Positions 465-37,500 of a stretch of 64,000 bases of DNA are shown piece after piece. The first letter of the stretch is position 1, and the number at the start of each line of letters is the position of its first letter. The notes under the pieces are model-generated. The model searched no databases. It was not told the origin of the DNA and worked only from the letters and a program-made list of their open reading frames with translations. Location: the NCBI GenBank assembly GCA_965644495.1, contig CBFFSA010000001.1, forward strand, positions 4,030,001 through 4,094,000. The letters are read 5' to 3'. The DNA comes from Perkinsela sp. CCAP 1560/9. Its lineage: Eukaryota; Protista; Euglenozoa: Kinetoplastea. The position numbers and the translations under genes were made by a program.

Positions 465-581
465 TTTCTTTTTTAGGCTCTTCGTTAAACGCGGTGGTCG
501 TTTTCAACCTAGAAGTCACTCATGCTGCGCTCTTCGCGTAGAAAACTACCACCGCGTTTAACGAAGAGCCTAAAAAAGAAA
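465..581. repeat. Long inverted repeat: 41-bp arms with 1 mismatch, 35-bp loop
   Basis: TTTCTTTTTTAGGCTCTTCGTTAAACGCGGTGGTCGTTTTC (465-505) is the reverse complement of 541-581 except at one base. Confidence 0.9.
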
Positions 582-856
582 AATCGCGAAAAGATCATGA
601 CTAATCTTTTTTTGGGGGAAAAAACCCGATTTTTCGGCGAAAAATGCGAAAATTTGGCCCAAATTTAAGCCGTTTTTGATGCCTTACCAGTAGAGTCAGG
701 AGGCGAATCTGACGAAACAAACGTCGTAGAATGGTAGCTGGGGTCCCAAACTCCTAAAACACGTTTTAGGAGTCGATTTTGGAAAAATAATATTTTTACT
801 TTTTTTTGGGTCAATTTTTTTTGGGGGTCACCCCAAAAATTTCGGAAATTTTGACC
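465..856. mobile_element. Dispersed non-autonomous repeat, copy 1 (homologous to the satellite flank at 34262-34560)
   Basis: Colinear shared blocks with 34262-34560: AAAAGATCAT, CGATTTTTCGGC, GCCGTTTTTGATGCCTTAC, ACGTCGTAGAATGGTAGCTGRGGTCCCAAACT, CGTTTTAGGAGTC, AATATTTTTACTTTTTTT. Confidence 0.75.
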
Positions 857-1311
857 TTCCTCCTGCGCGTACCAGGGGATGGGGTACCCCCATGGGGGGG
901 GGGGGGGGGGGGAATTATCGCCGCGGCCTACTCTACCACTTCCCTGCGCTCGATTTCGAAAAACAAAAAATTCGAAAAAAAGAAATCGCGACGTATGCCC
1001 CCCCCCTGGACCCCCCCCATGGACCCCCCATTTTTTTCAATTTTGTTTTTCAGTTTTGGTCCACCGGAGCCCCCTTTTATATTTTTTTCTTCTATTATAT
1101 TACTGTGTTCCTCTTTATATTTTCACTGTTTTTGTTCACTTTTTTTCTATAATCGAGGGTAGAGCGGTAGTTATACAACCACTGCAATATCAACAATATC
1201 ATACATCGTTACTTAGAAAATGCAGTTATATTTCATAGGTTTACCATTTCATATTATTGTATTAGCTTTCTCATTACTATGGGCTCATCAAACAACAATT
1301 GAGCTGTCATA

Positions 1312-1678
1312 CAGTGGTTTCAAGATATCTTCCCCCCGGGGGAATTTTGAGTTTTTTTATTTGTTTTTTCTCATTTTTGCAGCATTGGATAGATCTCGTT
1401 TCTCTGGTGAAGCGCTTTGCTACCTTTTTATGTAGGGGCCCCCTGGTACCCCCTGGGTCCAAAACACATGGTTTGGACTTCATTCCAAGGTTCGTATTTA
1501 TCAAAAATCTTGTTTTGGCTGTTTTTCGGGTCACCATATGAGCACTACGGGGTCCCTGTGAAAAGAGAGGTGCCAAAGCGCTTCACTGGGGGAACGAGAT
1601 CTCTCGTTTGCAACAAAAATGAGCAAAAACGGACACAAAGACTCAAAATTCGCAGGGGGGGTACAATTGAAACCATTG
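1312..1678. mobile_element. Tc1/mariner/pogo-type MITE with long imperfect TIRs and TA target duplication
   Basis: TA|CAGTGGTTTCAA ... TTGAAACCATTG|TA; inverted similarity continues about 130 bp inward (AGATCTCGTTTCTCTGGTGAAGCGCTTTG vs CAAAGCGCTTCACTGGGGGAACGAGATCT). Confidence 0.8.
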
Positions 1679-1929
1679 TATTTTGTACACAGAAATACTA
1701 TGCACAGAAAAATAAATTCACTAAATTTTCGTAAAACGAATTCTCGTTCAATTTCCCCCAATAATTACTAAACCGCAATATTTACCTCCGCAATTCGAGG
1801 CTAAAGCAACCACCGCACTTTGTTCCCCCATCTCATTTTACCCCCTACTCTCCTAAAACCCGCATTTCACCCTTCCTTTTTCATCAAACCCTTTTCTTCT
1901 CTCATCCCCCTTCCCCTCCTCCTCCCCCC

Positions 1930-3234
1930 ATGTCTTCTCTCCTCTTCACCCTCCTCCTCTCCCTTCTCCTCCCCATCCTCCCCACCCTCGACGACGCCTC
2001 CGACCTCCCCCACCCTCCTCCCTTCGACCGCGAAGCCGCCTACCGCCCTGACTCCTACCCACCATCGACTGCATCTTCACCAGCGTCTTCTTCACCAGCG
2101 TCTTCTACTTCTTCACAAGCGTCTTCTTCTTCTTCACAAGCGTCCTCTTCTTCTTCTTCACAAACGTCTTCTTCTTCTTCACAAGCGTCTTTTTCTTCTC
2201 TATCTTCTTCTTCACAAGCGTCTTCTTCATCTCTATCACCATCTTCACCAGCTTCTTCTTCTTTATCCGCTCTATCGTCTTCTTCATCTTCACGACCCTC
2301 CTCTTCCTCCTCTTCCCTATCCCCGTCTTCCCTATCCCCGTCTCCCCGAGCGTCTTCTTCTTCCTCCTCTTCCCTATCCCCGTCATCCCTATCCCCGTCT
2401 TCCCTATCCCCGTCTCCCCGAGCGTCTTCTTCCTGTTCCTCCTCTTCCCGGCCCTCCCCCCGTCCCTCCCCCCGCCCCGGCCGCGTCTCCGCCTCCCTCC
2501 TCTCCCCCACCCACCAGCTCCTCCGCCTCACCGCCCCCCTCCACAACCCCCACCCCTCCTGGGTCCCCGAGACCCGCGCCTCCCCCTGGACCTGGTTCCT
2601 CTGGGGAACCCCCGACGCCGCGGCGGAGGTCGACGTCTGTGCCACCTGGTACGGCGTCGTGTGCAGCCCCGCCGGGGAGGTCCTGGAGCTGCGGTGGAAC
2701 GACCTCGACCTCAAAGGGAACCTCTCCTGGGGCTACGTCCCCCGGGCGACCACCCAGCGGGTCTCGGTCTACCGCAACGACCTCACCGGGGGGCTCCCGC
2801 TCGGGGACCTCCCGGGGGGGCTGCGCTACCTGTGCGTGTCGAGTAACCAGATGGGCGGGGGGCTGGGGCTGGGGGGGATGCCCCACGGGATGACGGATGT
2901 GTACGCCCGGCATAACGGGTTTGAGGGGGGGGTGGAGCTGGAGAGGCTGCCGCAGACGCTGGGGTTTTTGTATTTGAGCTTTAACCGGTTGGGGGGGGAG
3001 GTGGGGTTGGGGGGGCTGCCGCAGGGGATGAAGAGGTTGCGGTTGGAGAATAATGAGTTCTCGGGGTGGTTGCGGGTGCCGAATCCGTTGCCGGAGGCGT
3101 TGGAGTATTTGGATGTCAGGCATAATCGGTTGCGGATTGCGCAGGAGGGTGGGGTGGTGTATCAACCCGGCGTGCAGGTGTATCTGTTTCCGCAAAAAGG
3201 GGATGACATGGATACTCCTTTTTTGGTGATATAA
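1930..3234 (+). CDS. Secreted/surface leucine-rich-repeat protein with signal peptide and Ser/Pro-rich region
   Basis: Hydrophobic N-terminus (LLFTLLLSLLLPIL), Ser-rich tract, LRRNT cap (VCATWYGVVCSPAGEV), repeats of LxxLxLxxNxLxGxxxLxxLP type. Confidence 0.88.
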   Translation: MSSLLFTLLLSLLLPILPTLDDASDLPHPPPFDREAAYRPDSYPPSTASSPASSSPASSTSSQASSSSSQASSSSSSQTSSSSSQASFSSLSSSSQASSSSLSPSSPASSSLSALSSSSSSRPSSSSSSLSPSSLSPSPRASSSSSSSLSPSSLSPSSLSPSPRASSSCSSSSRPSPRPSPRPGRVSASLLSPTHQLLRLTAPLHNPHPSWVPETRASPWTWFLWGTPDAAAEVDVCATWYGVVCSPAGEVLELRWNDLDLKGNLSWGYVPRATTQRVSVYRNDLTGGLPLGDLPGGLRYLCVSSNQMGGGLGLGGMPHGMTDVYARHNGFEGGVELERLPQTLGFLYLSFNRLGGEVGLGGLPQGMKRLRLENNEFSGWLRVPNPLPEALEYLDVRHNRLRIAQEGGVVYQPGVQVYLFPQKGDDMDTPFLVI

Positions 3235-17647: not shown

Positions 17648-18316
17648 ATGTTGAGGTTAAACGTTTTAACCAGCGAATCCCTGTCGATTCGTAAATCTCG
17701 CTTAGGAAGAGTCGGTCTAAATTCTCAACCTGACGAAATTATGCTATTGATGTTCATACAAGAAATTGAAACTCATCATCGCAGTTGGAAATCTTCCTGT
17801 TCACCATGTAAATGGAGTGGGGTTGTCTGTAATCCCGAAGGGAATGTGCGCTCCATATATTGGAATAACCACAATTTACGAGGATGCAATTTACGTTGGA
17901 GACACCTTCCTCAACAATTGGCATATCTAGACTTGTCGTCTAACAAACTAAGCGGTCCTGTATCACTCGATGAATTCCCACGGGACATGCAGACAATAAG
18001 CTTATGCGACAATAAATTTACAGGGAACTTAAAGTTTTCTGAGTGCCCTCCAATGTTAAGATCGCTGTATTTGCACGACAACAAGTTTCAAGGCATTGTA
18101 AATCTTCAAGACCTATCCGAGCGCGTACGTTGCATTAGCCTCTCAGGGAATTCAGGTCTTTACGGATGGTATGATTCAAAAAGGTTACCCGAGGATCTCA
18201 ATGTCTTTTTGCTAGACGGCACATATATATTTGAAAAGCCTTCATCTTGGCAATATTTAACTTTAGTCTGTGCAATGGGTGCACTTGCTGGAGTCACTAC
18301 ACTATTACGTTTATGA
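17648..18316 (+). CDS. LRR protein with hydrophobic C-terminal tail, tandem copy A
   Basis: PCKWSGVVC cap, LAYLDLSSNKLSG-type repeats, tail LTLVCAMGALAGVTTLLRL; TTTTTTCAG acceptor about 20 nt upstream. Confidence 0.9.
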   Translation: MLRLNVLTSESLSIRKSRLGRVGLNSQPDEIMLLMFIQEIETHHRSWKSSCSPCKWSGVVCNPEGNVRSIYWNNHNLRGCNLRWRHLPQQLAYLDLSSNKLSGPVSLDEFPRDMQTISLCDNKFTGNLKFSECPPMLRSLYLHDNKFQGIVNLQDLSERVRCISLSGNSGLYGWYDSKRLPEDLNVFLLDGTYIFEKPSSWQYLTLVCAMGALAGVTTLLRL

Positions 18317-23357: not shown

Positions 23358-23645
23358 CAGAAGTGAGCTTCGCTCACAGTTGGGCCTTGCTCTCAGACGG
23401 GGGCTTTTGCCTCCAGAAGTGGGCTTCGCTGGCAGAATCCTAGAAAATTTCGGTGAAAAAAAATCAAAACCCGTTCGTTGAATCGTTCAACGAAGTAGAG
23501 ACATAGCCGATATTTGGCCTTTTTCGCTAAAAAACGATTCCCTTGTGATGGGGGACTATGGTATTTCATTGCCAAAGGTCTTGAAACCACCCAAAGCAAC
23601 AAATTACAAGTAACATTTTTTTTCAGTTTCAAACTCTATTCCTTT

Positions 23646-24314
23646 ATGTTGAGGTTAAACGTTTTAACCAGCGAATCCCTGTCGATTCGTAAATCTCGCT
23701 TAGGAAGAATCGGTCTAAATTCTCAACCTGACGAAATTATGCTATCGATGTTCATACAAGAAATTGAAACTCATCATCGCAGTTGGAAATCTTCCTGTTC
23801 ACCATGTAAATGGAGTGGGGTTGTCTGTAATCCCGAAGGGCAAGTGCGCTCTATGTTTTGGAATGACCACAATTTACGAGGATGCAATTTGACTTGGAGG
23901 CACCTTCCTCAACAATTGGCATATCTAGACTTGTCGTCTAACAAACTAAGCGGTCCTGTATCACTCGATGAATTCCCACGGGACATGCGGGCGATAACTT
24001 TATCCAACAATAAATTTACAGGGAACTTAAAGTTTTCTGAGTGCCCTCCAATGTTAAGATCGCTGTATTTAGACGGGAACAAGTTTCAAGGTATTGTATA
24101 TATTCATGACCTATCCGAGCACTTATGTCGCATCAACCTCTCAGGGAATTCAGGTCTTTACGGATGGTATGATTCAAAAAGGTTACCCGAGGATCTCAAT
24201 GTCTTTTTGTTAGATGGCACATATATTTTTAAGAAGCCTTCATCTTGGCAATGTTTAACTTTAGTCTGTGCAATGGGTGCACTTGCTGGAGTCACTACAC
24301 TATTACGTTTATGA
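23646..24314 (+). CDS. LRR protein, tandem copy B (mosaic of copies A and C)
   Basis: 222 aa, aligns without gaps to 17648 and 25835; ATG at 23646 by paralogy. Confidence 0.9.
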   Translation: MLRLNVLTSESLSIRKSRLGRIGLNSQPDEIMLSMFIQEIETHHRSWKSSCSPCKWSGVVCNPEGQVRSMFWNDHNLRGCNLTWRHLPQQLAYLDLSSNKLSGPVSLDEFPRDMRAITLSNNKFTGNLKFSECPPMLRSLYLDGNKFQGIVYIHDLSEHLCRINLSGNSGLYGWYDSKRLPEDLNVFLLDGTYIFKKPSSWQCLTLVCAMGALAGVTTLLRL

Positions 24315-25834: not shown

Positions 25835-26503
25835 ATGTTGAGGTTTAACGTTTTAACCAGAGAATCCCCACTGATTCGTAAATCTCGCTTAGGAAGAGTC
25901 GGTCTAAATTCTCAACCTGACGAAATTATACTATCGATGTTCATACAAAAAATACGAACCTACCATCACAGTTGGAGCTCTTCCTGTCCACCGTGTAAAT
26001 GGAGTGGGGTTGTCTGTAATCCCGAAGAGCAAGTGCGCTCTATGTTTTGGAATGACCACAATTTACGAGGATGCAATTTGACTTGGAGGCACCTTCCTCA
26101 ACAATTGGCATATCTAGACTTGTCGTCTAACAAACTAAGCGGTCCTGTATCACTCGATGAATTCCCACGGGACATGCGGGCGATAACTTTATCCAACAAT
26201 AAATTTACAGGGAACTTAAAGTTTTCTGAGTGCCCTCCAATGTTAAGATCGCTGTATTTAGACGGGAACAAGTTTCAAGGTATTGTATATATTCATGACC
26301 TATCCGAGCACTTATGTCGCATCAACCTCTCAGGGAATTCAGGTCTTTACGGATGGTATGATTCAAAAAGGTTACCCGAGGATCTCAATGTCTTTTTGTT
26401 AGATGGCACATATATTTTTAAGAAGCCTTCATCTGAGCAATGTTTAACTTTTGCCTGTGCAATGGGTGCACTTGCTGGAGTCACTACGCTATTACGTTTA
26501 TAA
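25835..26503 (+). CDS. LRR protein, tandem copy C
   Basis: 222 aa paralog with the same upstream TTTTTTTCAG acceptor context. Confidence 0.9.
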   Translation: MLRFNVLTRESPLIRKSRLGRVGLNSQPDEIILSMFIQKIRTYHHSWSSSCPPCKWSGVVCNPEEQVRSMFWNDHNLRGCNLTWRHLPQQLAYLDLSSNKLSGPVSLDEFPRDMRAITLSNNKFTGNLKFSECPPMLRSLYLDGNKFQGIVYIHDLSEHLCRINLSGNSGLYGWYDSKRLPEDLNVFLLDGTYIFKKPSSEQCLTFACAMGALAGVTTLLRL

Positions 26504-26903: not shown

Positions 26904-29708
26904 ATGTCTCACTCGGGACCTACAGTTGACTTTCTGATTCCCCCACGCCATGAGTTGCGTGTGCACTGCGACATCAATACTCTCCCATTAGGACCCCACT
27001 GTTTCTCATTCCACAAAAGCGAGACACATCAAAGCCATAATTCCTCTAAATCAATCGATCGTCCCGCAAATGAAAGTGTTAAAACTTTATCACATCTCCA
27101 AAAGAACACGCCTGCCTCCGGAAGCACGGAGCTACGAGAGTATGCAGCTGATTACATTGCCCCTGCCTTACATCTGACCATTCTAAAACCACGACGCAGT
27201 GCGCATTCATCCTCTATCGGAAACCCCCAAAAAACGACAGAAGATGATGACTACTCCTCCTGGGCGGAAAACGAAGACACTGTCTCTTCTCCACGCTGCG
27301 CAACCCAACAACAAACCAAAGCTGCTGGATTAAAAAAACGACCCCATGAAAAAGAAAGATCAGCCTCTGTTTCTTCTCTCCCCAAGACTTCGGTTTCTTC
27401 TTCTGTTTCTTCTTCTCCAGCCTCTCCCAGCTCTTCTTTATTCTCCACGGCCGAAATTTTCGGTGCCGAGCTGTTTCTCCAACACCGCTATCTTTTCTCC
27501 TGTGAGTGTTCCCACCTTGGGGTGTATTCCCCGACAGGGTGTGTGGCGCGTGTAGGGCTCACGACCCCCTACCCCACCCCGCGCTCCCTCTTTGGGGAAA
27601 AACAACAACGAGAGACCCACCCCTTAGATCCACGAAATTTTTGTGCCGTCCTCCCGCATTCCGACACGCCTGTGTTTGTGGATCTCCACAGTGTGTTGCA
27701 CAGTGCCCGAAGACGCGCCCAGCAAGGGGAGGAAAAAGCAAAAGGGCTGGCTTCGCTGGCCTCGTTTGCGGTGGTGGGAAAGGAAAGGGAAAAACAAAAG
27801 GAAAAGGTACCCAGGAGGGAAAGGATGATCCAGGAGGATGAAGGAAATGAAGAAACTACACGAAAAAGTGTAACGCAAACGGTTTCATCAAGTTTTGGAT
27901 CGATCTCCTCGAATGCGAATGTTTCTTCTATTTCTACAAATCTAACATCTTCATCCTCTGCTCCATTCTGTGGTCCACGCGTGATGATTTGTGGAAGTCC
28001 ATGCAGCGGGAAACGAACCCTCTCACAAGCTTTACTCAACTACGGTGTTCGCGCGGGATATCCTTTGACCTATGTCGACCTTGACCCCTCCCACCCGCTT
28101 TTAGGATTGCCCGAAAGCATGAGCGTAAGTCATCTTAACGCGACACTTCACCCCAGTCGTATTTTTACGCATTCTCCTGCATTTTCTGTTTTCTATGGAT
28201 TTGCACATCCACAGGGAAATTGGTCGTTTTATGTGCAGTGTGTTCGTCGACTGGCATCCGTTACGCGGCAATATTTTGTAAAACATGCAAAAGAAAAGGA
28301 GAGATGGGGAGGTCTTGTGGTGCGCATTCCGTCATTGGATCTTTCCACTCCGTTAGAGGATGAGGAAAAGCATTCCTCTATTTCTGGATTGAGATCGGCA
28401 ATTTCCGAAACAGAAGAGTCTCCTCCAGCAATTGACTTTTCTGCCCCCCTCACGGTGCGGTCATTTCTCTCGTTAGTCCTTCACAGTTTTGATATTGACA
28501 CGGTTTTTTGTGTGGGCAATGAACAACTGATACATGAGGTAAAGCGATGCTCACCTAAACCCGTACGTAACGTTCTGGACTCGGCAAACGCATCCAATGC
28601 CTCCGTGTCTTTACCTGAAACGGAAGAGGACTTTTCTCTCCAGAATATGCTCTATCAGGACCACTGCGTAAATCCCAACGGGATGACTGATATTTCGCTT
28701 TATGCCGTCGAGCCTCTTCGTGGACGTCATGTTCCTTGTGACGTTCGTGAAAAAACATCGGAGGGAGCGTATCCGCAAGAATCGGATCAAAACACATCTC
28801 TTTTTTCACCCTTTGTGTTGGAAGAGGGAAGGACAGCTTCATCTACTCCCCCCAGTCTTCCTCTTCTACCCTCGGGGAAACCATCACAAGTCCTTCCGCT
28901 TTCTATTCTTAAACCTCATCTCTCTCGCATTTATGACACGATGGGACTCGTCACTGTCCCGACAGTGAATGGAACACTTTACTATCCCAGTTCCATCATC
29001 TCGTTTCTTCGTAAATATTTTTACGGCACCTTACGATGGAGCAAAGAGAAAAAAATAGCAAAGGATACAATCAAAGTGGAAAAGGACTCAAAAATAGAGG
29101 AACAATCACAACCACAGTTTATTTCTCAGGGAAAGCATGCGTTATCTAGGACAGAAAAGTCTCATCTGGATTCTGATCGCCTTCTGTCGTGTATATTTTG
29201 TGCTCACTCTCATCTCCGTACCCTTTCGAGTTTTTCTCATCGATTGGTTCGAGTTGGAGCGTCTCATCGGTTAGATTCAATTGAGGGGATTCTTCCTCTT
29301 GGTGAGACCTCCTTGCTCGAGGCGATTGGAGTAGAAGAGATCTCGGCGTTTAGTGTAAATCTAATGGGACGAATCCTCTCGTTTGTGCAGGTAAAACGGG
29401 AGGAAGGATCTTCCAAGCGAAAGAAACGTGAAAATATGGATAAACCATCATCTTCCGAGTTACAAAGTTCAGCCACGAAATCAGAGATTCGAACTGACAC
29501 AGACCTCACCTTATGTGAAGACAGAGAAGACAAAATGGTCTCTCTCGAAGGTTTTTCTCAACGCCTGCGAAATTCCCGAGTGTTGGGGTATGGATACATC
29601 ACAGGTGTTGATCTCTCAAGCCAGAGTTTGGAGATTATCACAGCTTTCCCAAGTTGGCCTGGATATTCGGACGTGTATTATTTGGTCGGGGAAAGGAATT
29701 ATTTATAA
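26904..29708 (+). CDS. CLP1: Clp1 family polyribonucleotide 5'-kinase / mRNA cleavage factor, with long insertions
   Basis: PRHELRV, TAEIFGAEL...YLF...GVYSPTGC, GPRVMICGSPCSGKRTLSQALLNYGVRAG.PLTYVDLDP, FYG, LPLGE, VLGYGYITGVD all follow Clp1 motifs in order. Confidence 0.88.
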   Translation: MSHSGPTVDFLIPPRHELRVHCDINTLPLGPHCFSFHKSETHQSHNSSKSIDRPANESVKTLSHLQKNTPASGSTELREYAADYIAPALHLTILKPRRSAHSSSIGNPQKTTEDDDYSSWAENEDTVSSPRCATQQQTKAAGLKKRPHEKERSASVSSLPKTSVSSSVSSSPASPSSSLFSTAEIFGAELFLQHRYLFSCECSHLGVYSPTGCVARVGLTTPYPTPRSLFGEKQQRETHPLDPRNFCAVLPHSDTPVFVDLHSVLHSARRRAQQGEEKAKGLASLASFAVVGKEREKQKEKVPRRERMIQEDEGNEETTRKSVTQTVSSSFGSISSNANVSSISTNLTSSSSAPFCGPRVMICGSPCSGKRTLSQALLNYGVRAGYPLTYVDLDPSHPLLGLPESMSVSHLNATLHPSRIFTHSPAFSVFYGFAHPQGNWSFYVQCVRRLASVTRQYFVKHAKEKERWGGLVVRIPSLDLSTPLEDEEKHSSISGLRSAISETEESPPAIDFSAPLTVRSFLSLVLHSFDIDTVFCVGNEQLIHEVKRCSPKPVRNVLDSANASNASVSLPETEEDFSLQNMLYQDHCVNPNGMTDISLYAVEPLRGRHVPCDVREKTSEGAYPQESDQNTSLFSPFVLEEGRTASSTPPSLPLLPSGKPSQVLPLSILKPHLSRIYDTMGLVTVPTVNGTLYYPSSIISFLRKYFYGTLRWSKEKKIAKDTIKVEKDSKIEEQSQPQFISQGKHALSRTEKSHLDSDRLLSCIFCAHSHLRTLSSFSHRLVRVGASHRLDSIEGILPLGETSLLEAIGVEEISAFSVNLMGRILSFVQVKREEGSSKRKKRENMDKPSSSELQSSATKSEIRTDTDLTLCEDREDKMVSLEGFSQRLRNSRVLGYGYITGVDLSSQSLEIITAFPSWPGYSDVYYLVGERNYL

Positions 29709-30017
29709 ACTTGCCGCCATTTCTTGTGAAAATACTTCCGTTGGAGCTTTCCACCAAAGTCATTTGGTGAATTTATCTGTCATGCGTAGAAACATTCGAC
29801 AAGCCGTCTGGCTTGAGGTCCACAATCAGGCGATTTGAATGTCTTATTCTCCATATTTGCTTATCATTTTTTCTGCCCAATTCAACATCACTTTCTTTTC
29901 ATAATTCCAGAACGAACCGCGTAAACTTCAAACGTATCCAAAGTACAGACTCACGCAACTATTTTCAACATCAAATCAAGCCTATTTTCTCCTCCTCTAC
30001 CTCTCCCCTCCTTCCCC

Positions 30018-31898
30018 ATGTCGGTTCCCTCCCACTCCACCTACCGGTACCTTATGCCGGGCCGATCTCGATTCGAGAACTGGCGAGGGGTTTTCTACCC
30101 TTGTCGTATGTCGCCTCGAGCTCGACTGGAACATCACATCCGTACCACGCGGAGCACGAACGAAAAAATCAAAGCCTTCGAGGCGCAACGATCCGCGATC
30201 GAGTCCCGAGAAAAACAACACTGGTGGGAAAACGACATGGTCGATGAGACACCCCCTCCATCCGTATCCCATGAGGAGAAAACCAAAAAAGCCTGGCAGC
30301 ATTACATTTCCCTATGCGAGTGCAATGATTACGGGTTCCCGGGGTACGCCATGAACCATTTCGATGCGATTCTATCGCTCCATGGTGATTTCATGCCCCT
30401 ACGCAACGGGGGGGATGCCCCTCCGTCTTCTCTACTCCCTCTAACCGCGTTCCCCAGCCTCGTGGAAAGTTTTCGCGCACGAAAACTCGAGACCTACCTT
30501 TGTGAGACCCAGTGCCACTACGACACCACGGAGGCGATTAAAAAAATGGGGGAGTATCAAGGCACCGAACGTGTCGACCACGCCAGCTATGTCGTGGAGT
30601 GTTGTATGGATTTACTTCGTAGGGAGAGAGGAAGCGGTACTCTCCCCACTCGCTCTACTACCTCGAAACTACAAGCTTCACAAGCTTCAAAAACGGAGCT
30701 TTCCACCTCTTTTTCTTCTTCTTCTTCCCTGCAAAACAGTAACAACAAAACCCTGCTGCTCCATCTCTTCAACGCGCTCATGTCGGTGATGCTCTCCGGG
30801 GGCTTTGCCAACTGCCAGCGTGTGTTTGCCCAAACCTACGACGCGCTGGGGGTCCAAAAGGTCTGCCCGAATCTCACTACTTATCTTCACACCATCCGGG
30901 CCCTCAGCCTGTGTGGGGAACTCACCCAGGCCCAGTCTCTGTTCCACTGGCTGCGCTCGAAATGCCCCGAAAATTTATCGTTTACTCTTTTTACTTTAAT
31001 GTTTGAATGTTACCGGGAGAATAGAAATCCCGAGGCCGCGGATGCGCTGTGGGCGGATTGCGTGGCCTCGAACGCGTCCTCGAGGCTTTCGTTAGAGGCC
31101 GCGGAGCTGTATCTACGGGATATTGTCGATCGGGCCTATACCCCGTTGGCCGGGGATATGGCTTATTACGGTCAACCGAATCATGCGGAGATGAAGAAAA
31201 TTCCGCTTTTGGTGGATACGCTTCGGGAAAATGGTCTTCCTCCGGAATTCCTCTCTCCGGTGGTTAAATTTCATATCAACGACGCGTTGATTTGTTACCG
31301 TATCCCGGAGGGGAGGAAGTACGCCTGGGCGCGATCAAAGTCTCAGTTTTCGTTTTTAAACATGAGGCGCGCGGAGCAGTATGTGGATGACCTTCTGGAG
31401 CTCACCAGTGGGGGCGGGATGCGCGGGTTGCCGCAGGAAAAGGACCAAAAAGGGAGTAGCGGGATTGGACCGTATTATGGCCGTCATGGGGGAAAGAAGA
31501 CCTGGGAGAGTACCCCGGCGGATTCGTTGTTTTACCAGTTTAAGGTGGAGGAACAAAAGAAGGACACCCGGATGGAGAGTAAGAATACGATTTCCCGGAC
31601 GGATTTGTATGAGAGGGGTGCGCATTGGATGGCGGAGAGCCCGCAGACACGGTACGATCATTTGTATGCGCAACATAAGGTTGATTTTCGTCGTCTAGGG
31701 GTGAGAAGGCATTTGGACCCGAATGCGGCAGGCTCTGAGGAGGATATGGCCCGGGATGCGGCTGTGGTGGCCTCGGTGACGAAAATGGGGCAGCGCTTAC
31801 GCCGGCAAAACCCTCGGATGCGGTCTGAGGGGGGAGGGGGGAGAGGAGATAGGGGAGAAGGGATGAGTGTGTCCTATTTGGAATTCGAAAAGGATTGA
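30018..31898 (+). CDS. PPR-containing protein, probably mitochondrial (resembles kinetoplastid mitoribosome-associated PPR proteins)
   Basis: PPR-like units FNALMSVML, PNLTTYLHTIRALSLCGELTQAQSLF, FTLMFECYRENRNPEAADALW; the specific orthology is recalled, not verified. Confidence 0.7.
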   Translation: MSVPSHSTYRYLMPGRSRFENWRGVFYPCRMSPRARLEHHIRTTRSTNEKIKAFEAQRSAIESREKQHWWENDMVDETPPPSVSHEEKTKKAWQHYISLCECNDYGFPGYAMNHFDAILSLHGDFMPLRNGGDAPPSSLLPLTAFPSLVESFRARKLETYLCETQCHYDTTEAIKKMGEYQGTERVDHASYVVECCMDLLRRERGSGTLPTRSTTSKLQASQASKTELSTSFSSSSSLQNSNNKTLLLHLFNALMSVMLSGGFANCQRVFAQTYDALGVQKVCPNLTTYLHTIRALSLCGELTQAQSLFHWLRSKCPENLSFTLFTLMFECYRENRNPEAADALWADCVASNASSRLSLEAAELYLRDIVDRAYTPLAGDMAYYGQPNHAEMKKIPLLVDTLRENGLPPEFLSPVVKFHINDALICYRIPEGRKYAWARSKSQFSFLNMRRAEQYVDDLLELTSGGGMRGLPQEKDQKGSSGIGPYYGRHGGKKTWESTPADSLFYQFKVEEQKKDTRMESKNTISRTDLYERGAHWMAESPQTRYDHLYAQHKVDFRRLGVRRHLDPNAAGSEEDMARDAAVVASVTKMGQRLRRQNPRMRSEGGGGRGDRGEGMSVSYLEFEKD

Positions 31899-32149
31899 AA
31901 GAGCGGTGGGGAGGTTAACGACAAGGACTTCGGTTTCGGTGTGTAAAGGTGGCTCATTCTTTTGTTTTTAATATTTGTCTTTATAATCACTTTCTTTGCG
32001 TATTCTGGTTCACTCTTTACACGTTTTGTTTGGCTTCTATCGGTATCATTATCTCCCGTAAATACCATAAGAAAGACATTTTGTTTATCTGTTACATTTT
32101 CTTCCTCTTCCTCTACCCTTGAATAGCGGGTAGGGTTTCACACATTCAT

Positions 32150-32620
32150 ATGTCGGAAGATCCGAAAAAAACGTCCCACATTGCCAAGCGCAGCCAGCGT
32201 GAGCTCACACGAATTCATACCCCTTACTCTGTTGACTTGGCCATTAACACAGACATTCCTTACGTTATTGTGATTCGCTTTGGTCGTGAAAACACGTCGG
32301 ACTGCGCAGAAATGGACGAAACACTGCGCCGAATTGTTCATCTAGTACGTAATTTTGCAGAAATTTACGCCGTTGATATGGATGTCATTTCGGATTTCAC
32401 TGAGATGTATGAGCTTGAGGATGACGTGAACGTCATGTTTTTTTATCAGAACCGTCACATCCAAGTTGATTGCGGCAGTGGGGTACACTCTCGAATTCAT
32501 TTCCCTATCCATGAGCCACAAGAAATGGTAGATTTGATTGAGATCGTGTTCCGCGGAGCGCAAAAAGGTCTTGCAAAGGTGGAAAGTGTTCAGCAGTATG
32601 CTACACGACATCGCTTTTAG
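32150..32620 (+). CDS. DIM1: Dim1 / U5 snRNP 15K thioredoxin-like protein
   Basis: VDLAI...VIRFG....C..MDETL...VRNFAEIYAVD...DFTEMYEL...VMFFYQNRHIQVDCGSG...QEMVDLIEIVFRGAQKG matches the Dim1/TXNL4A family. Confidence 0.93.
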   Translation: MSEDPKKTSHIAKRSQRELTRIHTPYSVDLAINTDIPYVIVIRFGRENTSDCAEMDETLRRIVHLVRNFAEIYAVDMDVISDFTEMYELEDDVNVMFFYQNRHIQVDCGSGVHSRIHFPIHEPQEMVDLIEIVFRGAQKGLAKVESVQQYATRHRF

Positions 32621-32768
32621 GACTTTCTTCTTTATTTCTTTACCGCGCGACATTTCTCCGCACTTCAACACTGTTCTCCATCTTTCCACGCAACGATTTT
32701 TAGAAATCTTTAAAAAACTCATTTTGCTGCACAGTGCACAAATACCTTCCATACAAAATCTAAACGTG

Positions 32769-32804
32769 CTAATCTTTCTTTCATATCGTATCTTCTTTTC
32801 TTAG
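32769..32804 (+). promoter_or_regulatory. Putative trans-splice acceptor (CTAAT, polypyrimidine tract, AG)
   Basis: CTAATCTTTCTTTCATATCGTATCTTCTTTTCTTAG ends 6 nt before the ATG at 32811, with no evident upstream exon. Confidence 0.55.
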
Positions 32805-32810
32805 TCTTCC

Positions 32811-33995
32811 ATGAGCGGGGTGGGACGCCATCACCATGCCCGACACGTAGTGCAGCAAATGAACGAAAAGCAGGTCCCCTTACTTCATTCCTCCACAGAG
32901 TGCCTTGCTCGGTGTCTCGAGTGCCGCGGAAACAATCTCTGGAAAGTGGAGTACTGGCGCCCAAACGCAACAAAGGAAACCAAAAAAACACATTTCTCAC
33001 CAGATGACGAGGAATATGAAAAAAATAATGATGCATTATTTCCCATCGCGCTCGCAAAGCTTTCTCGACGACTGCACAAAGTGATTTGGTTACAACGGGG
33101 GGACTTAGTTGTGTTGGAAAGTGTATCGGATGATATTTCACAATCCGGGGTCTCTGCTGAGTGTTGTTCTGAGGCTCTGAAAGAAACACCCATCTCTGTG
33201 AGATCTCGCAATACGAATGTTACATTAGATGCCTCGAATTTTCACTTAAATGGGTCTTCCTTCCATCCTCCATTCAGTACACAAAGCTGTCATGTTGAAA
33301 CCGAGTGCAACTCTGAACAAGTAGATGTAGTACGGGAATCTTACTCCAATTCGGATGCAGATCGTTCTAATAAGGACAGCAGCAGCGGAAAAAAGCGACG
33401 CGCCCGTAACTTTGGTGACTCTGGATTCACATCGAGTTTCGCTGAAACATCTCAGGCTCGCTCTTGTTCAGTTCTAGCAGAGCATAAACATGATGCGTCG
33501 CAGGTTGAGTGTGCATTCTCGAACGGATCTAAGTTCTCCTTTTTTATTACACGCAAGCTTTCGCTTGTTCAGCGTAAAACATTGCGCAAAGAAGCTATAT
33601 CCTACCGTACTGACGTGTCTTCTGAAATAAGAGGTTCGGAAGGACAAACAACTTTAAAATACACCTCTTCTCCGTTCTTGTTGCAGATACAAAAACAAAC
33701 GCACGCTGTCCCACCTCCATGTGCAGATACACTACCCCATAGTAAATTTATAAGCGCTAGTGCAAATATTAACACTTCGCATGACACCGATCTTGGCGTC
33801 ACATCATTGCTACATTTTCTCAGCCTTGGTTGCTTTGATAATTGTGATAGTCGGACCTTATCACAGGACCCTAAGTATCCAACCACGACGCACAATATGT
33901 CTTTGCAAATGGGAAACAGGTCCATGGGATGGGATCTGGACACATCATCCTCACCTTCTGAAAATGAAGAAGAGGACAAAGTGTTTCTTGATTAA
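32811..33995 (+). CDS. eIF1A-domain (S1/OB-fold) RNA-binding protein, eIF1AD-like, with long extension
   Basis: ARCLECRGNNLWKV ... LAKLSRRLHKVIWLQRGDLVVLE is the eIF1A/eIF1AD signature; acidic C-terminus. Confidence 0.75.
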   Translation: MSGVGRHHHARHVVQQMNEKQVPLLHSSTECLARCLECRGNNLWKVEYWRPNATKETKKTHFSPDDEEYEKNNDALFPIALAKLSRRLHKVIWLQRGDLVVLESVSDDISQSGVSAECCSEALKETPISVRSRNTNVTLDASNFHLNGSSFHPPFSTQSCHVETECNSEQVDVVRESYSNSDADRSNKDSSSGKKRRARNFGDSGFTSSFAETSQARSCSVLAEHKHDASQVECAFSNGSKFSFFITRKLSLVQRKTLRKEAISYRTDVSSEIRGSEGQTTLKYTSSPFLLQIQKQTHAVPPPCADTLPHSKFISASANINTSHDTDLGVTSLLHFLSLGCFDNCDSRTLSQDPKYPTTTHNMSLQMGNRSMGWDLDTSSSPSENEEEDKVFLD

Positions 33996-34261
33996 TTTAA
34001 CTGCAACAATGCAATATAAACCCCCCACAGCGAATAAGTCACCCCCCACTTTTTTTTGTACAACGAGGCTTAGGGGGGTTTCGGCACCACTTTTTGGTTC
34101 AAAATTCTAAGATCTCCAAGTTCCTGCTATTTTGAGGTCTCTAAAAATACATCCAATCCAAAAAATATGATCGCTAAAATTCATAAACCCCCCCGCGCAC
34201 ATTAGTTACATAGGATTTTGGTAACTAATAGGTCATATGTAACTAATAAGTGATTTTTCAA

Positions 34262-34563
34262 TTTTAGGCTCTTCGTTAAACACGGTCGTAGTTTTCAACG
34301 CGAAGCGCGCAGCATGAATGACTTCGCCAAAAGATCATAAATATTCTAAATTTATTCTTTTGGGTGACAAAGCGCGATTTTTCGGCACAAATTGCGAACT
34401 TTTTATCCGACTTTGGGCCGTTTTTGATGCCTTACTAGTAGTGGTAGGAAGCCAATCTTTCGTAAAAAACGTCGTAGAATGGTAGCTGAGGTCCCAAACT
34501 CTCGAAATACGTTTTAGGAGTCCATTTCGGAAAAACAATATTTTTACTTTTTTTGGCGCAAAC
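34262..34563. mobile_element. Dispersed non-autonomous repeat, copy 2, directly abutting the satellite
   Basis: Begins TTTTAGGCTCTTCGTTAAAC and aligns with 465-815 up to AATATTTTTACTTTTTTTGG, then the array starts. Confidence 0.78.
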
Positions 34564-37500
34564 TTTTTTGTAAAGATCGAGTTTTATGTAAAGATCGAGT
34601 TTTTTGTAAAGATCGAGTTTTTAGCAAAGATCGAGTGTCTTGTAAAGATCGAGTGTTTCATAAATATCTTGATTTTAGTAAAGATCGAGTGTTTTGTAAA
34701 GATCGAGTTTTTTGTAAAGATCGAGTGTTTTGTAAAGATCGAGTGTTTCGTAAATATCGAGTTTTTAGTAAAGATCGAGTGTTTTGTAAAGATCGAGTTT
34801 TTTGTAAATATCGAGTTTTTTGTAAAGATCGAGTGTTTTGTAAAGATCGAGTTGTTTGTAAAGAGCGAGTTTTTTGTAAAGATCCAGTTTTATGTAAAGA
34901 TCGAGTGCTTTGTAAATATCGAGTGTTTCGTAAATATCGAGTTTTTTGTAAAGATCGAGTGTTTTGTAAAGATCGAATTTTTTGTAAAGATCGAGTTTTT
35001 TGTAAAGATCGAGTTTTTAGCAAAGATCGAGTTTTTTGTAAAGATCGAGTTTTTTGTAAAGATCGAATCATTTGTAAATATCGAGTGTTTCGTAAATATC
35101 GAGTTTTTTGTAAAGATCGAGTGTTTTGTAAAGATCGAGTGTTTTGTAAAGATCGAGTTGTTTGTAAAGATCGAGTGTTTTGTAAAGATCCAGTTTTATG
35201 TAAAGATCGAATCTTTTGTAAATATCGAGTGTTTCGTAAATATCGAGTTTTTTGTAAAGATCGAGTGTTTTGTAAAGATCGAATTTTTTGTAAAGATCGA
35301 GTGTTTTGTAAAGATCGAGTGTTTTGTAAAGATCGAATCATTTGTAAATATCGAGTGTTTCGTAAATATCGAGTTTTTAGTAAAGATGGACCTTTTTGTA
35401 GAGATCGAGTTTTTTGTAAAGATCGAGTGTTTTGTAAAGATCGAGTTGTTTGTAAAGATCGAGTTTTTTGTAAAGATCCAGTTTTATGTAAAGATCGAAT
35501 CTTTTGTAAATATCGAGTGTTTCGTAAATATCGAGTTTTTTGTAAAGATCGAGTGTTTTGTAAAGATCGAGTGTTTTGTAAAGATCGAGTTGTTTGTAAA
35601 GAGCGAGTTTTTTGTAAAGATCCAGTTTTATGTAAAGATCGAGTGCTTTGTAAATATCGAGTGTTTCGTAAATATCGAGTTTTTTGTAAAGATCGAGTGT
35701 TTTGTAAAGATCGAATTTTTTGTAAAGATCGAGTTTTTTGTAAAGATCGAGTTTTTAGCAAAGATCGAGTTTTTTGTAAAGATCGAGTTTTTTGTAAAGA
35801 TCGAATCATTTGTAAATATCGAGTGTTTCGTAAATATCGAGTTTTTTGTAAAGATCGAGTGTTTTGTAAAGATCGAGTGTTTTGTAAATATCGAGTTTTT
35901 TGTAAAGATCGAGTGTTTTGTAAAGATCGAGTGTTTTGTAAAGATCGAATTTTTTGTAAAGATCGAGTGTTTTGTAAAGATCGAGTGTTTTGTAAAGATC
36001 GAATCATTTGTAAATATCGAGTGTTTCGTAAATATCGAGTTTTTAGTAAAGATGGACCCTTTTGTAGAGATCGAGTTTTTTGTAAAGATCGAGTGTTTTG
36101 TAAAGATCGAGTTGTTTGTAAAGATCGAGTTTTTTGTAAAGATCCAGTTTTATGTAAAGATCGAATCTTTTGTAAATATCGAGTGTTTCGTAAATATCGA
36201 GTTTTTTGTAAAGATCGAGTGTTTTGTAAAGGTCGAATTTTTTTTTAAAGATCGAGTGTTTTGTAAAGATCGAGTGTTTTGTAAAGATCGAGTTTTTTGT
36301 AAAGATCGAGTTTTTTGTAAAGATCGAATCATTTGTAAATATCGAGTTTTTCGTAAATATCGAGTTTTTTGTAAAGATCGAGTGTTTTGTAAAGATCGAG
36401 TTTTTTGTAAAGATCGAGTTATTTTTTGAAGATCGAGTTTTTAGTAAAGATCGAGTGTTTTGTAAAGATCGAGTTGTTTGTAAAGATCGAGTTTTTTGTA
36501 AAGATCCAGTTTTATGTAAAGATCGAGTGCTTTGTAAATATCGAGTGTTTTGTAAAGATCGAATTTTTTGTAAAGATCGAGTTTTTTGTAAAGATCGAGT
36601 TTTTAGCAAAGATCGAGTTTTTTGTAAAGATCGAGTTTTTTGTAAAGATCGAATCATTTGTAAATATCGAGTGTTTCGTAAATATCGAGTTTTTTGTAAA
36701 GATCGAGTGTTTTGTAAAGATCGAGTGTTTTGTAAAGATCGAGTTGTTTGTAAAGATCGAGTGTTTTGTAAAGATCCAGTTTTATGTAAAGATCGAATCT
36801 TTTGTAAATATCGAGTGTTTCGTAAATATCGAGTTTTTTGTAAAGATCGAGTGTTTTGTAAAGCTCGAATTTTTTGTAAAGATCGAGTGTTTTGTAAAGA
36901 TCGAATTTTTTGTAAAGATCGAGTGTTTTGTAAAGATCGAGTGTTTTGTAAAGATCGAATCATTTGTAAATATCGAGTGTTTCGTAAATATCGAGTTTTT
37001 TGTAAAGATCGAGTGTTTTGTAAAGATCGAGTTGTTTGTAAAGATCGAGTTTTTTGTAAAGATCCAGTTTTATGTAAAGATCGAATCTTTTGTAAATATC
37101 GAGTGTTTCGTAAATATCGAGTTTTTTGTAAAGATCGAGTGTTTTGTAAAGGTCGAATTTTTTTTTAAAGATCGAGTGTTCTGTAATGATCGAGTGTTTT
37201 GTAAAGATCGAGTGTTTTGTAAATATCGAGTGTTTTGTAAAGATCGAGTTTTTTGTAAAGATCGAGTTTTTTGTAAAGATCGAATCATTTGTAAATATCG
37301 AGTGTTTCGTAAATATCGAGTTTTTTGTAAAGATCGAGTGTTTTGTAAAGATCGAGTTTTTTGTAAAGATCGAGTTATTTTTTGAAGATCGAGTGTTTTG
37401 TAAAGATCGAGTGTTTTGTAAAGATCGAGTTGTTTGTAAAGATCGAGTTTTTTGTAAAGATCCAGTTTTATGTAAAGATCGAGTGCTTTGTAAATATCGA

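What the first reader, a model, noticed from the sequence alone, without database searches (positions are those of the whole stretch)
34262..34700. The 29-kb satellite starts inside a dispersed repeat whose array-free sister copy is in the same window
Seen: the 300 bp before the first monomer are colinear with 465-815. Homology ends at AATATTTTTACTTTTTTT(T)GG, where copy 1 continues into a short GGTCAA..TTGACC hairpin and copy 2 goes straight into the array. Inference: the satellite is an internal expansion of a non-autonomous element, so mobile elements could seed or carry large (possibly centromeric) arrays in this lineage. Satellites arising inside TEs are known in plants and insects; I do not know of a case in kinetoplastid-like protists.
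Basis: partly seen in the sequence, partly recalled or inferred. Interest (0 to 1): 0.8.

Follow-up and report, generated by a model that had tools for sequence, protein, structure and literature searches.

The report
LINE-seeded satellite inside hairpin element
A 39-kb block of an 18-letter repeat does start inside a common jumping-DNA element of this amoeba-dwelling protist, but the repeat unit most likely came from the front end of a different jumping gene (a LINE retrotransposon), and the element it sits in is a bystander.

Summary
Observation confirmed. The array starts inside an ordinary copy of an abundant, hairpin-ended, Helentron/HINE-like non-coding element (at least 323 ends genome-wide). 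The array is 38.9 kb on contig C1 and 4.3 kb on the other haplotype (C69). Both far ends also abut this family, but at different places.

Internal expansion or carriage by the element is not supported. No other copy holds tandem monomers, the monomer has no significant source in the element (14/18, P 0.2-0.35), and the far-side piece looks like another subfamily.

The only other array of this monomer is 20 near-uniform units at C1:388 kb. It lies about 500 bp upstream, on the sense strand, of an endonuclease...RNase H LINE with intact domain spacing. I predicted the RNase H position before finding it (chance about 0.5%).

Best reading: a LINE's 5' repeat landed in the element, lost the LINE body and expanded in place. 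The 388-kb letters could not be fetched, so that link rests on coordinates. Centromere function is untested. The scan reported LINE 5' arrays and a LINE-headed 40-kb satellite elsewhere in this Perkinsela-like genome.

The parts
465..1188 (+). Complete subfamily-A copy of the hairpin-ended non-autonomous element (array-free sister)
   Evidence: full-length copies are about 680-940 bp
465..582 (+). 118-nt left-end hairpin; contains the 11-bp subterminal repeat at 491-501
   Evidence: fold -48.5 kcal/mol, z -14.8
998..1029 (+). Element's native internal C-rich 12-14-bp tandem repeat, 2-7 units among copies; unrelated to the satellite and missing from the array-bearing copy
1091..1188 (+). Right-end module with small stem-loop and the inverted subterminal repeat (1175-1185), ending in AAT; its homologue follows the array on haplotype C69
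32811..33995 (+). Last gene of the + strand gene cluster before the array (394 aa; only a weak eIF-1a hit below the cut-off)
34262..34325 (+). Rearranged element head: one hairpin arm plus inverted loop, other arm deleted, so no hairpin forms; begins after AT like other copies
   Evidence: a similar independent rearrangement without any array lies at G000:C4:12818
34326..34563 (+). Subfamily-A body, 90% to family consensus, 96% to its C69 allele
34564..34570 (+). Junction: T6-G shared by the element's A/T linker and the monomer; the same on both haplotypes and unique in the genome
34564..64000 (+). 18-bp satellite, 30% GC, consensus TTTTTTGTAAAGATCGAG (27% of units; 135 variants), irregular higher-order repeats; continues to C1:4103472

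Best explanation
The satellite is an orphaned, expanded 5' repeat array of an ingi-like (endonuclease-RT-RNase H) LINE, and the hairpin element is the target it landed in. Step 1 (inferred from coordinates): a LINE family of this genome carries this 18-mer as a tandem array at its 5' end, as in the copy at C1:384-388.7 kb. Step 2 (inferred): one copy retrotransposed into the T-rich linker of an A-subfamily element at the end of a gene cluster. The window junction would be its 5' junction, with T6-G microhomology. Step 3 (shown as end state): neither haplotype has a LINE endonuclease or RNase H downstream of the array on its strand. The body and the element's interior were lost by deletion, leaving different far junctions on neighbouring B-subfamily copies. 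Step 4 (shown as end state): the array diversified and changed size in place by slippage or unequal exchange, giving 38.9 kb versus 4.3 kb with no shared unit order beyond 5 units. The hairpin element neither made nor spread the monomer.
For: The monomer occurs as an array in only one other place, C1:388323-388679 on the - strand. Before I predicted an RNase H on the - strand at about 383.5-385 kb (reasoning recorded afterwards in note). One search found one at 384424-384855; chance is about 0.5% from 138 hits. One search found the endonuclease at 387168-387752 (-), about 500 bp downstream of the last monomer. Endonuclease-to-RNase H spacing is 2,960 bp, against 2,946-3,003 in 16 other copies. 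The mini-array has 19 of 20 units with the exact core and 15-16 full consensus units, while no 20-unit stretch of the big arrays has more than 16 and 10, so it is not a piece of today's satellite. Other LINEs here have stop-free frames of 2,000-2,845 aa around their endonuclease-RT-RNase H core, which fits kilobases of in-frame repeat. Against the element as source or vehicle.
Against: No RT hit was listed there, but only 150 of 1,072 candidates were scored. The probable sister LINE at C9:699900 (+) has no exact monomer core, since all forward matches are accounted for. No LINE remnant or duplication survives at the big array. Two exact 16-mers on other contigs remain unlocated.
Confidence: 0.6

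Rival explanations
1. One reading: the array grew inside one element copy from the element's own sequence, like the central repeats of HINE/DINE-1 elements; the element could then carry arrays.
For: C69 has the HINE layout: left module, array, right module, on one strand. The monomer aligns in phase with the element's subterminal T-run/ATCGAG motif at 14/18, and one variant at 15/18. Precedent exists in oyster and Drosophila (PMC7492417, PMC9659126).
Against: 14/18 is reached by 19-34% of shuffles, and the 15/18 variant was picked afterwards (P about 0.03 uncorrected). No other of several hundred copies has even two near-perfect monomers in tandem. The right module has T where 12 of 12 A copies have A and 13 of 16 B copies have T. 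The C1 far end is different. It does not explain the mini-array upstream of a LINE.
Confidence: 0.12
2. The satellite came first, of unknown origin, at the edge of a transposon-rich zone. It is flanked by the element because the element is the commonest repeat there. The 388-kb mini-array is a daughter, picked up as a 5' transduction by a LINE or pasted as repair filler next to one.
For: Element DNA is 14-35% of the zone beyond the array against 4% on the gene side. No LINE body or duplication is present at the big array.
Against: The mini-array is far more uniform than any part of either big array, so transduction would have to predate their diversification. Chance placement at a LINE 5' end with the right strand and distance is below 1%.
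Confidence: 0.22
3. On C1, the body-plus-array block was inserted into the loop of one flipped B-type hairpin, duplicating 29 bp of the loop as a long target-site duplication.
For: A 29-bp flipped-loop sequence (1 mismatch) lies at 34297-34325 and again right after the C1 array.
Against: C69 has the same left side but a different copy, with a standard loop, on the right. Flipped-loop heads with a lost arm occur without arrays (C4:12818).
Confidence: 0.04

Closest known systems
HINE / DINE-1 non-autonomous Helentrons with central tandem repeats (oyster Cg_HINE, PMC7492417; Drosophila DINE-TR1 as cited in PMC9659126)
   Same: Non-coding dispersed element with an 11-bp asymmetric subterminal inverted pair, a hairpin at each end, no variable target-site duplication, tandem copies and a short internal repeat; Helitron Rep genes in the same genome.
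   Different: The left hairpin is 118 nt rather than a 7-12-bp inverted repeat, and the insertion follows AT rather than lying in TT. The satellite is not a family trait: in oyster each array type travels with its element in many copies, whereas here one copy in hundreds has it.
ingi / L1Tc LINEs of trypanosomatids (PMC5814959)
   Same: Single frame with endonuclease, RT and RNase H; the element at C1:384-388 kb has that endonuclease-to-RNase H layout.
   Different: L1Tc begins with a single 77-nt promoter/ribozyme, not a tandem 18-bp array. I found no report of satellites seeded from it in the papers I searched.
Trypanosoma brucei centromere-associated arrays (PMC3292466, PMC1868937)
   Same: AT-rich array of tens of kb next to a directional gene cluster and degenerate retroelements, with length differences between homologues.
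   Different: The unit is 18 bp rather than about 147 bp. The haplotype difference is ninefold (4.3 kb versus 38.9 kb; T. brucei arrays are 20-120 kb). No functional evidence here.
LINE-derived satellites, e.g. chicken CR1-derived HinfI repeat (table in PMC9659126)
   Same: Satellite unit traceable to a LINE.
   Different: That case derives from 3' UTR/ORF2 sequence; here the source appears to be an already tandem 5' unit.

Membership tests
HINE (non-autonomous Helentron) - the host element | Asymmetric subterminal inverted repeats of 11-12 bp | tested here: met
   An 11-bp pair in the family majority sequence, at window 491-501 and 1175-1185 with one mismatch each in that copy
HINE (non-autonomous Helentron) - the host element | Inverted repeat next to the left subterminal repeat; hairpin at each end | tested here: met
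   118-nt left hairpin, z -14.8; small right stem-loop, weak on its own (z -0.9 to -1.8)
HINE (non-autonomous Helentron) - the host element | Palindrome distal to the right subterminal repeat | tested here: inconclusive
   The repeat forms the distal arm of the stem-loop rather than preceding it
HINE (non-autonomous Helentron) - the host element | No target-site duplication | tested here: inconclusive
   No variable duplication in 19 full-length copies. A constant AT precedes the element and ends it, so a 2-bp AT duplication cannot be told from target mimicry
HINE (non-autonomous Helentron) - the host element | Insertion into TT | tested here: not met
   Empty sites show insertion directly after AT, followed by A or T; right flanks also begin with C or G
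HINE (non-autonomous Helentron) - the host element | Autonomous RepHel partner sharing the termini | tested here: inconclusive
   17 Helitron_like_N hits, frames up to 2,975 aa; Rep and PIF1 fragments lie beside copies; termini of an intact RepHel element not read
Element-borne central-repeat satellite (Cg_HINE / DINE-TR type) | Many element copies carry the same central array | tested here: not met
   All 1,223 dimers map to this locus and one mini-array; junction unique
Element-borne central-repeat satellite (Cg_HINE / DINE-TR type) | Array lies between left and right modules of one element | tested here: inconclusive
   Layout present on C69, but the right module is B-type; absent on C1
ingi-like LINE with 5' array (source at C1:388 kb) | Endonuclease, RT and RNase H in order on one strand | tested here: inconclusive
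   Endonuclease and RNase H found at standard spacing; RT not among the scored candidates
ingi-like LINE with 5' array (source at C1:388 kb) | Array upstream of the frame on the sense strand | tested here: met
   Last monomer about 500 bp upstream of endonuclease model position 1
ingi-like LINE with 5' array (source at C1:388 kb) | Array inside the target-site duplication and joined to the start region | not tested
Kinetoplastid centromere array | Kinetochore binding or topoisomerase-II cleavage | not testable with these tools
   Only positional and compositional resemblance (PMC3292466)

The most novel reading that the evidence does not exclude
In this kinetoplastid lineage LINEs deliver short 5' repeat arrays that outlive the LINE and expand into chromosome-specific satellites of tens of kilobases, and these arrays serve as centromeres. 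Retrotransposons would then create new candidate centromere DNA at each insertion.
Probability: 0.2. Interest if true: 0.8.

Novelty: new variant of a known kind. Interest (0 to 1): 0.48.

Why it matters
Satellites born from transposons are well known, so the general idea is not new. Two things are of note. First, the birth of a 39-kb satellite can be tied to a specific donor, a 20-unit array at the head of a LINE, and this locus would show the late stage in which the LINE is gone. That makes satellite birth and turnover testable in a 21-Mb genome. Second, curated surveys find no Helitrons in trypanosomatids and report Merlin as the DNA transposon of Bodo and Perkinsela (PMC12278014, PMC8101967). 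A high-copy rolling-circle-like family with Helitron Rep genes in a Perkinsela-like genome extends the known kinetoplastid mobilome.

Tried and rejected
Monomer derived from the element's subterminal motif: not significant against shuffles.

Inverted terminus plus duplication at the far end: the motif belongs to another copy's hairpin.

An independent ENA long-read assembly (L043-L045) confirms a 4.8-kb array between the same A and B copies as C69. It lacks about 70 bp on the left and 110 bp on the right. I first read this as a moving junction, then discounted it: the downstream flank is 99.6% identical to C69 and its array looks like a degraded consensus.

Public-run contigs were too fragmented at the junction to decide anything. 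The monomer was not found in JGI metagenomes. Rfam found nothing in 1-35,500. Fishing for a LINE 5' end through RNase H homologues and metagenome relatives gave only truncated or distant elements. Endonuclease model PF14529 missed the 388-kb copy; PF03372 found it. An RNA-ligase probe for taxonomy failed, with an uninformative control.

After I fetched no more genome letters and ran only genome search with no loci. The big protein search was not used.

Full report
Setting. The window is G000:C1:4030001-4094000 of a 21-Mb, 110-contig assembly. The best hit of a nearby mitochondrial Hsp60 is a Paramoeba aestuarina transcriptome protein at 68%. With long uninterrupted frames on one strand, this fits a Perkinsela-like kinetoplastid endosymbiont. 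That placement is an inference, not a tree.

Observation. 34256-34569 matches 465-821 (79% over 246 nt, E 3e-55) and the first 18-bp unit starts at 34564. The array-side copy has lost one arm of its left hairpin and has the loop inverted. A similar damaged head exists without any array at C4:12818. Its body is 90% identical to the family consensus, within the 90-96% range of 27 other copies. At the junction the family has a hypervariable A/T linker, and element and monomer share T6-G.

The element. It is non-coding, about 680-940 bp, in two subfamilies (A and B) that share both ends and differ inside. There are 689 candidates for the A body and 323 exact right ends. It has a 118-nt left hairpin (z -14.8), a small right stem-loop and an 11-bp asymmetric inverted pair. 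It also has a C-rich internal repeat of 2-7 units and forms head-to-tail tandems. Filled and empty sites show insertion right after AT, with the element ending in AAT and no variable duplication. The genome has 17 Helitron Rep hits with frames up to 2,975 aa, and Rep or PIF1 fragments lie beside copies. It is built like a non-autonomous Helentron (features as in PMC7492417 and PMC13085455). The TT target is not met and shared termini with an intact RepHel were not read, so I do not file it as a member.

Far ends. On C1 the array is 38.9 kb (about 2,157 units) and ends in the flipped loop of a B copy, followed by a reverse-transcriptase fragment and Helitron pieces. Contig C69 is 99.1% identical over 16.3 kb on the gene side and has the same start junction. 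Its array is 4.3 kb and runs into the element's right module, then a B copy. However, the module has T at a site where 12 of 12 A copies have A and 13 of 16 B copies have T, so it more likely comes from a neighbouring B tandem. Element DNA is 14-35% of that zone. The two arrays share many variants but no run of more than 5 units in order. An independent ENA assembly confirms a roughly 4.8-kb array between the same two copies. Its clipped junctions may be consensus artefacts and are not used as evidence.

Genome-wide count. The monomer dimer (up to 1 mismatch) has 909 forward and 314 reverse matches. These are fully explained by the C1 array (909), its inverted duplicate at the contig end (171), C69 (125) and a mini-array at C1:388323-388679 (18). 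The start junction and the C69 far junction are unique. Two isolated exact 16-mers on other contigs were not located. So hundreds of element copies carry no array. The monomer's best match in the element (14/18) is chance level. The element is neither the vehicle nor a demonstrable source.

Where the unit comes from. Earlier scan notes said LINEs here begin with family-specific 17-19-bp arrays. I used that as a lead and predicted an RNase H domain on the minus strand 3.5-4.5 kb downstream of the mini-array. It was found at C1:384424-384855 (-) (chance about 0.5%). The endonuclease was found at 387168-387752 (-), about 500 bp from the last monomer. The spacing is 2,960 bp, against 2,946-3,003 in 16 other copies. 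The mini-array has 19 of 20 exact cores and 15-16 consensus units; no 20-unit stretch of the large arrays exceeds 16 and 10. It therefore looks like a young or ancestral form of the unit, placed where a LINE 5' array should be. Several other LINEs have stop-free frames of 2,000-2,845 aa, which fits long in-frame repeats; this is indirect. I could not read that locus, so junction, start and duplication are unseen, and RT was not among the scored hits.

Mechanism. Most likely (0.6), a LINE with this 5' array inserted into the T-rich linker of an A copy at the end of a gene cluster. Deletions then removed the LINE body and the rest of the A copy, joining the array to downstream B copies differently on the two haplotypes. 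Slippage and unequal exchange built 4.3 and 38.9 kb with irregular higher-order repeats. Shown: the junctions, the counts, the unit identity and the domain positions. Inferred: that the mini-array belongs to the LINE, the direction of transfer, and the lost body. Rivals: an older satellite that donated the mini-array (0.22); internal expansion of the element (0.12). Whether the LINE writes its array afresh or inherits an unstable one is not addressed by my data; the earlier notes disagree.

Comparison and verdict. Satellites inside Helentron derivatives and satellites from LINE sequence are known (PMC7492417, PMC9659126). Size, AT content, position and length difference between homologues resemble T. 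brucei centromere arrays (PMC3292466), but there is no functional evidence. Helitrons are reported absent from trypanosomatids (PMC12278014). The scan already noted LINE-headed arrays and a LINE-headed 40-kb satellite elsewhere in this genome; this locus adds a probable orphan case. Interest 0.48.

Noticed in passing
G000:C1:4103467-4135367 (L031-L035): The last 7,430 bp of the array plus 2,581 bp of flank are repeated inverted at the contig end with 100% identity; the next 2.4 kb differ at about 20 sites. Either a very recent fold-back duplication or an assembly artefact; not evidence of a symmetric centromere until raw reads are checked.
   Followed up: partly
L043/L044 versus window 29000-34260: The ENA assembly follows C1 at 32 sites up to about window 33,100 and C69 from about 33,200 on: a crossover or a phase switch. 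It supports C1 and C69 being alleles.
   Followed up: partly
window 18254-18255: Empty site on C1 where haplotype C69 carries several tandem B copies: a recent insertion polymorphism of the element.
   Followed up: partly
L036:7028-7146; L032:3770-3888: The element's last 38 bp are repeated three times in tandem in one lineage of B copies.
   Followed up: no
window 34070-34570: C1 and C69 differ at 13 of 498 sites next to the array; other 500-bp bins have 0-10 differences, and most have 2 or fewer.
   Followed up: no
window 17648-18316, 23514-24314, 25835-26503: Three related leucine-rich-repeat genes, 89-94% identical.
   Followed up: no
window 26904-29708: 934-aa protein with a CLP1 P-loop domain and no homologue other than itself in the word search.
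   Followed up: partly
window 1309-1681 and 151-244: Other imperfect palindromic repeats beside the sister copy.
   Followed up: no
G000:C45:30765-46416: RNase H domain repeated in tandem about every 748 bp (about 20 copies).
   Followed up: no
G000:C4:1122684 and C8:157712: Helitron Rep hits in open frames of 2,257 and 2,975 aa: candidate intact autonomous partners of the hairpin element.
   Followed up: no
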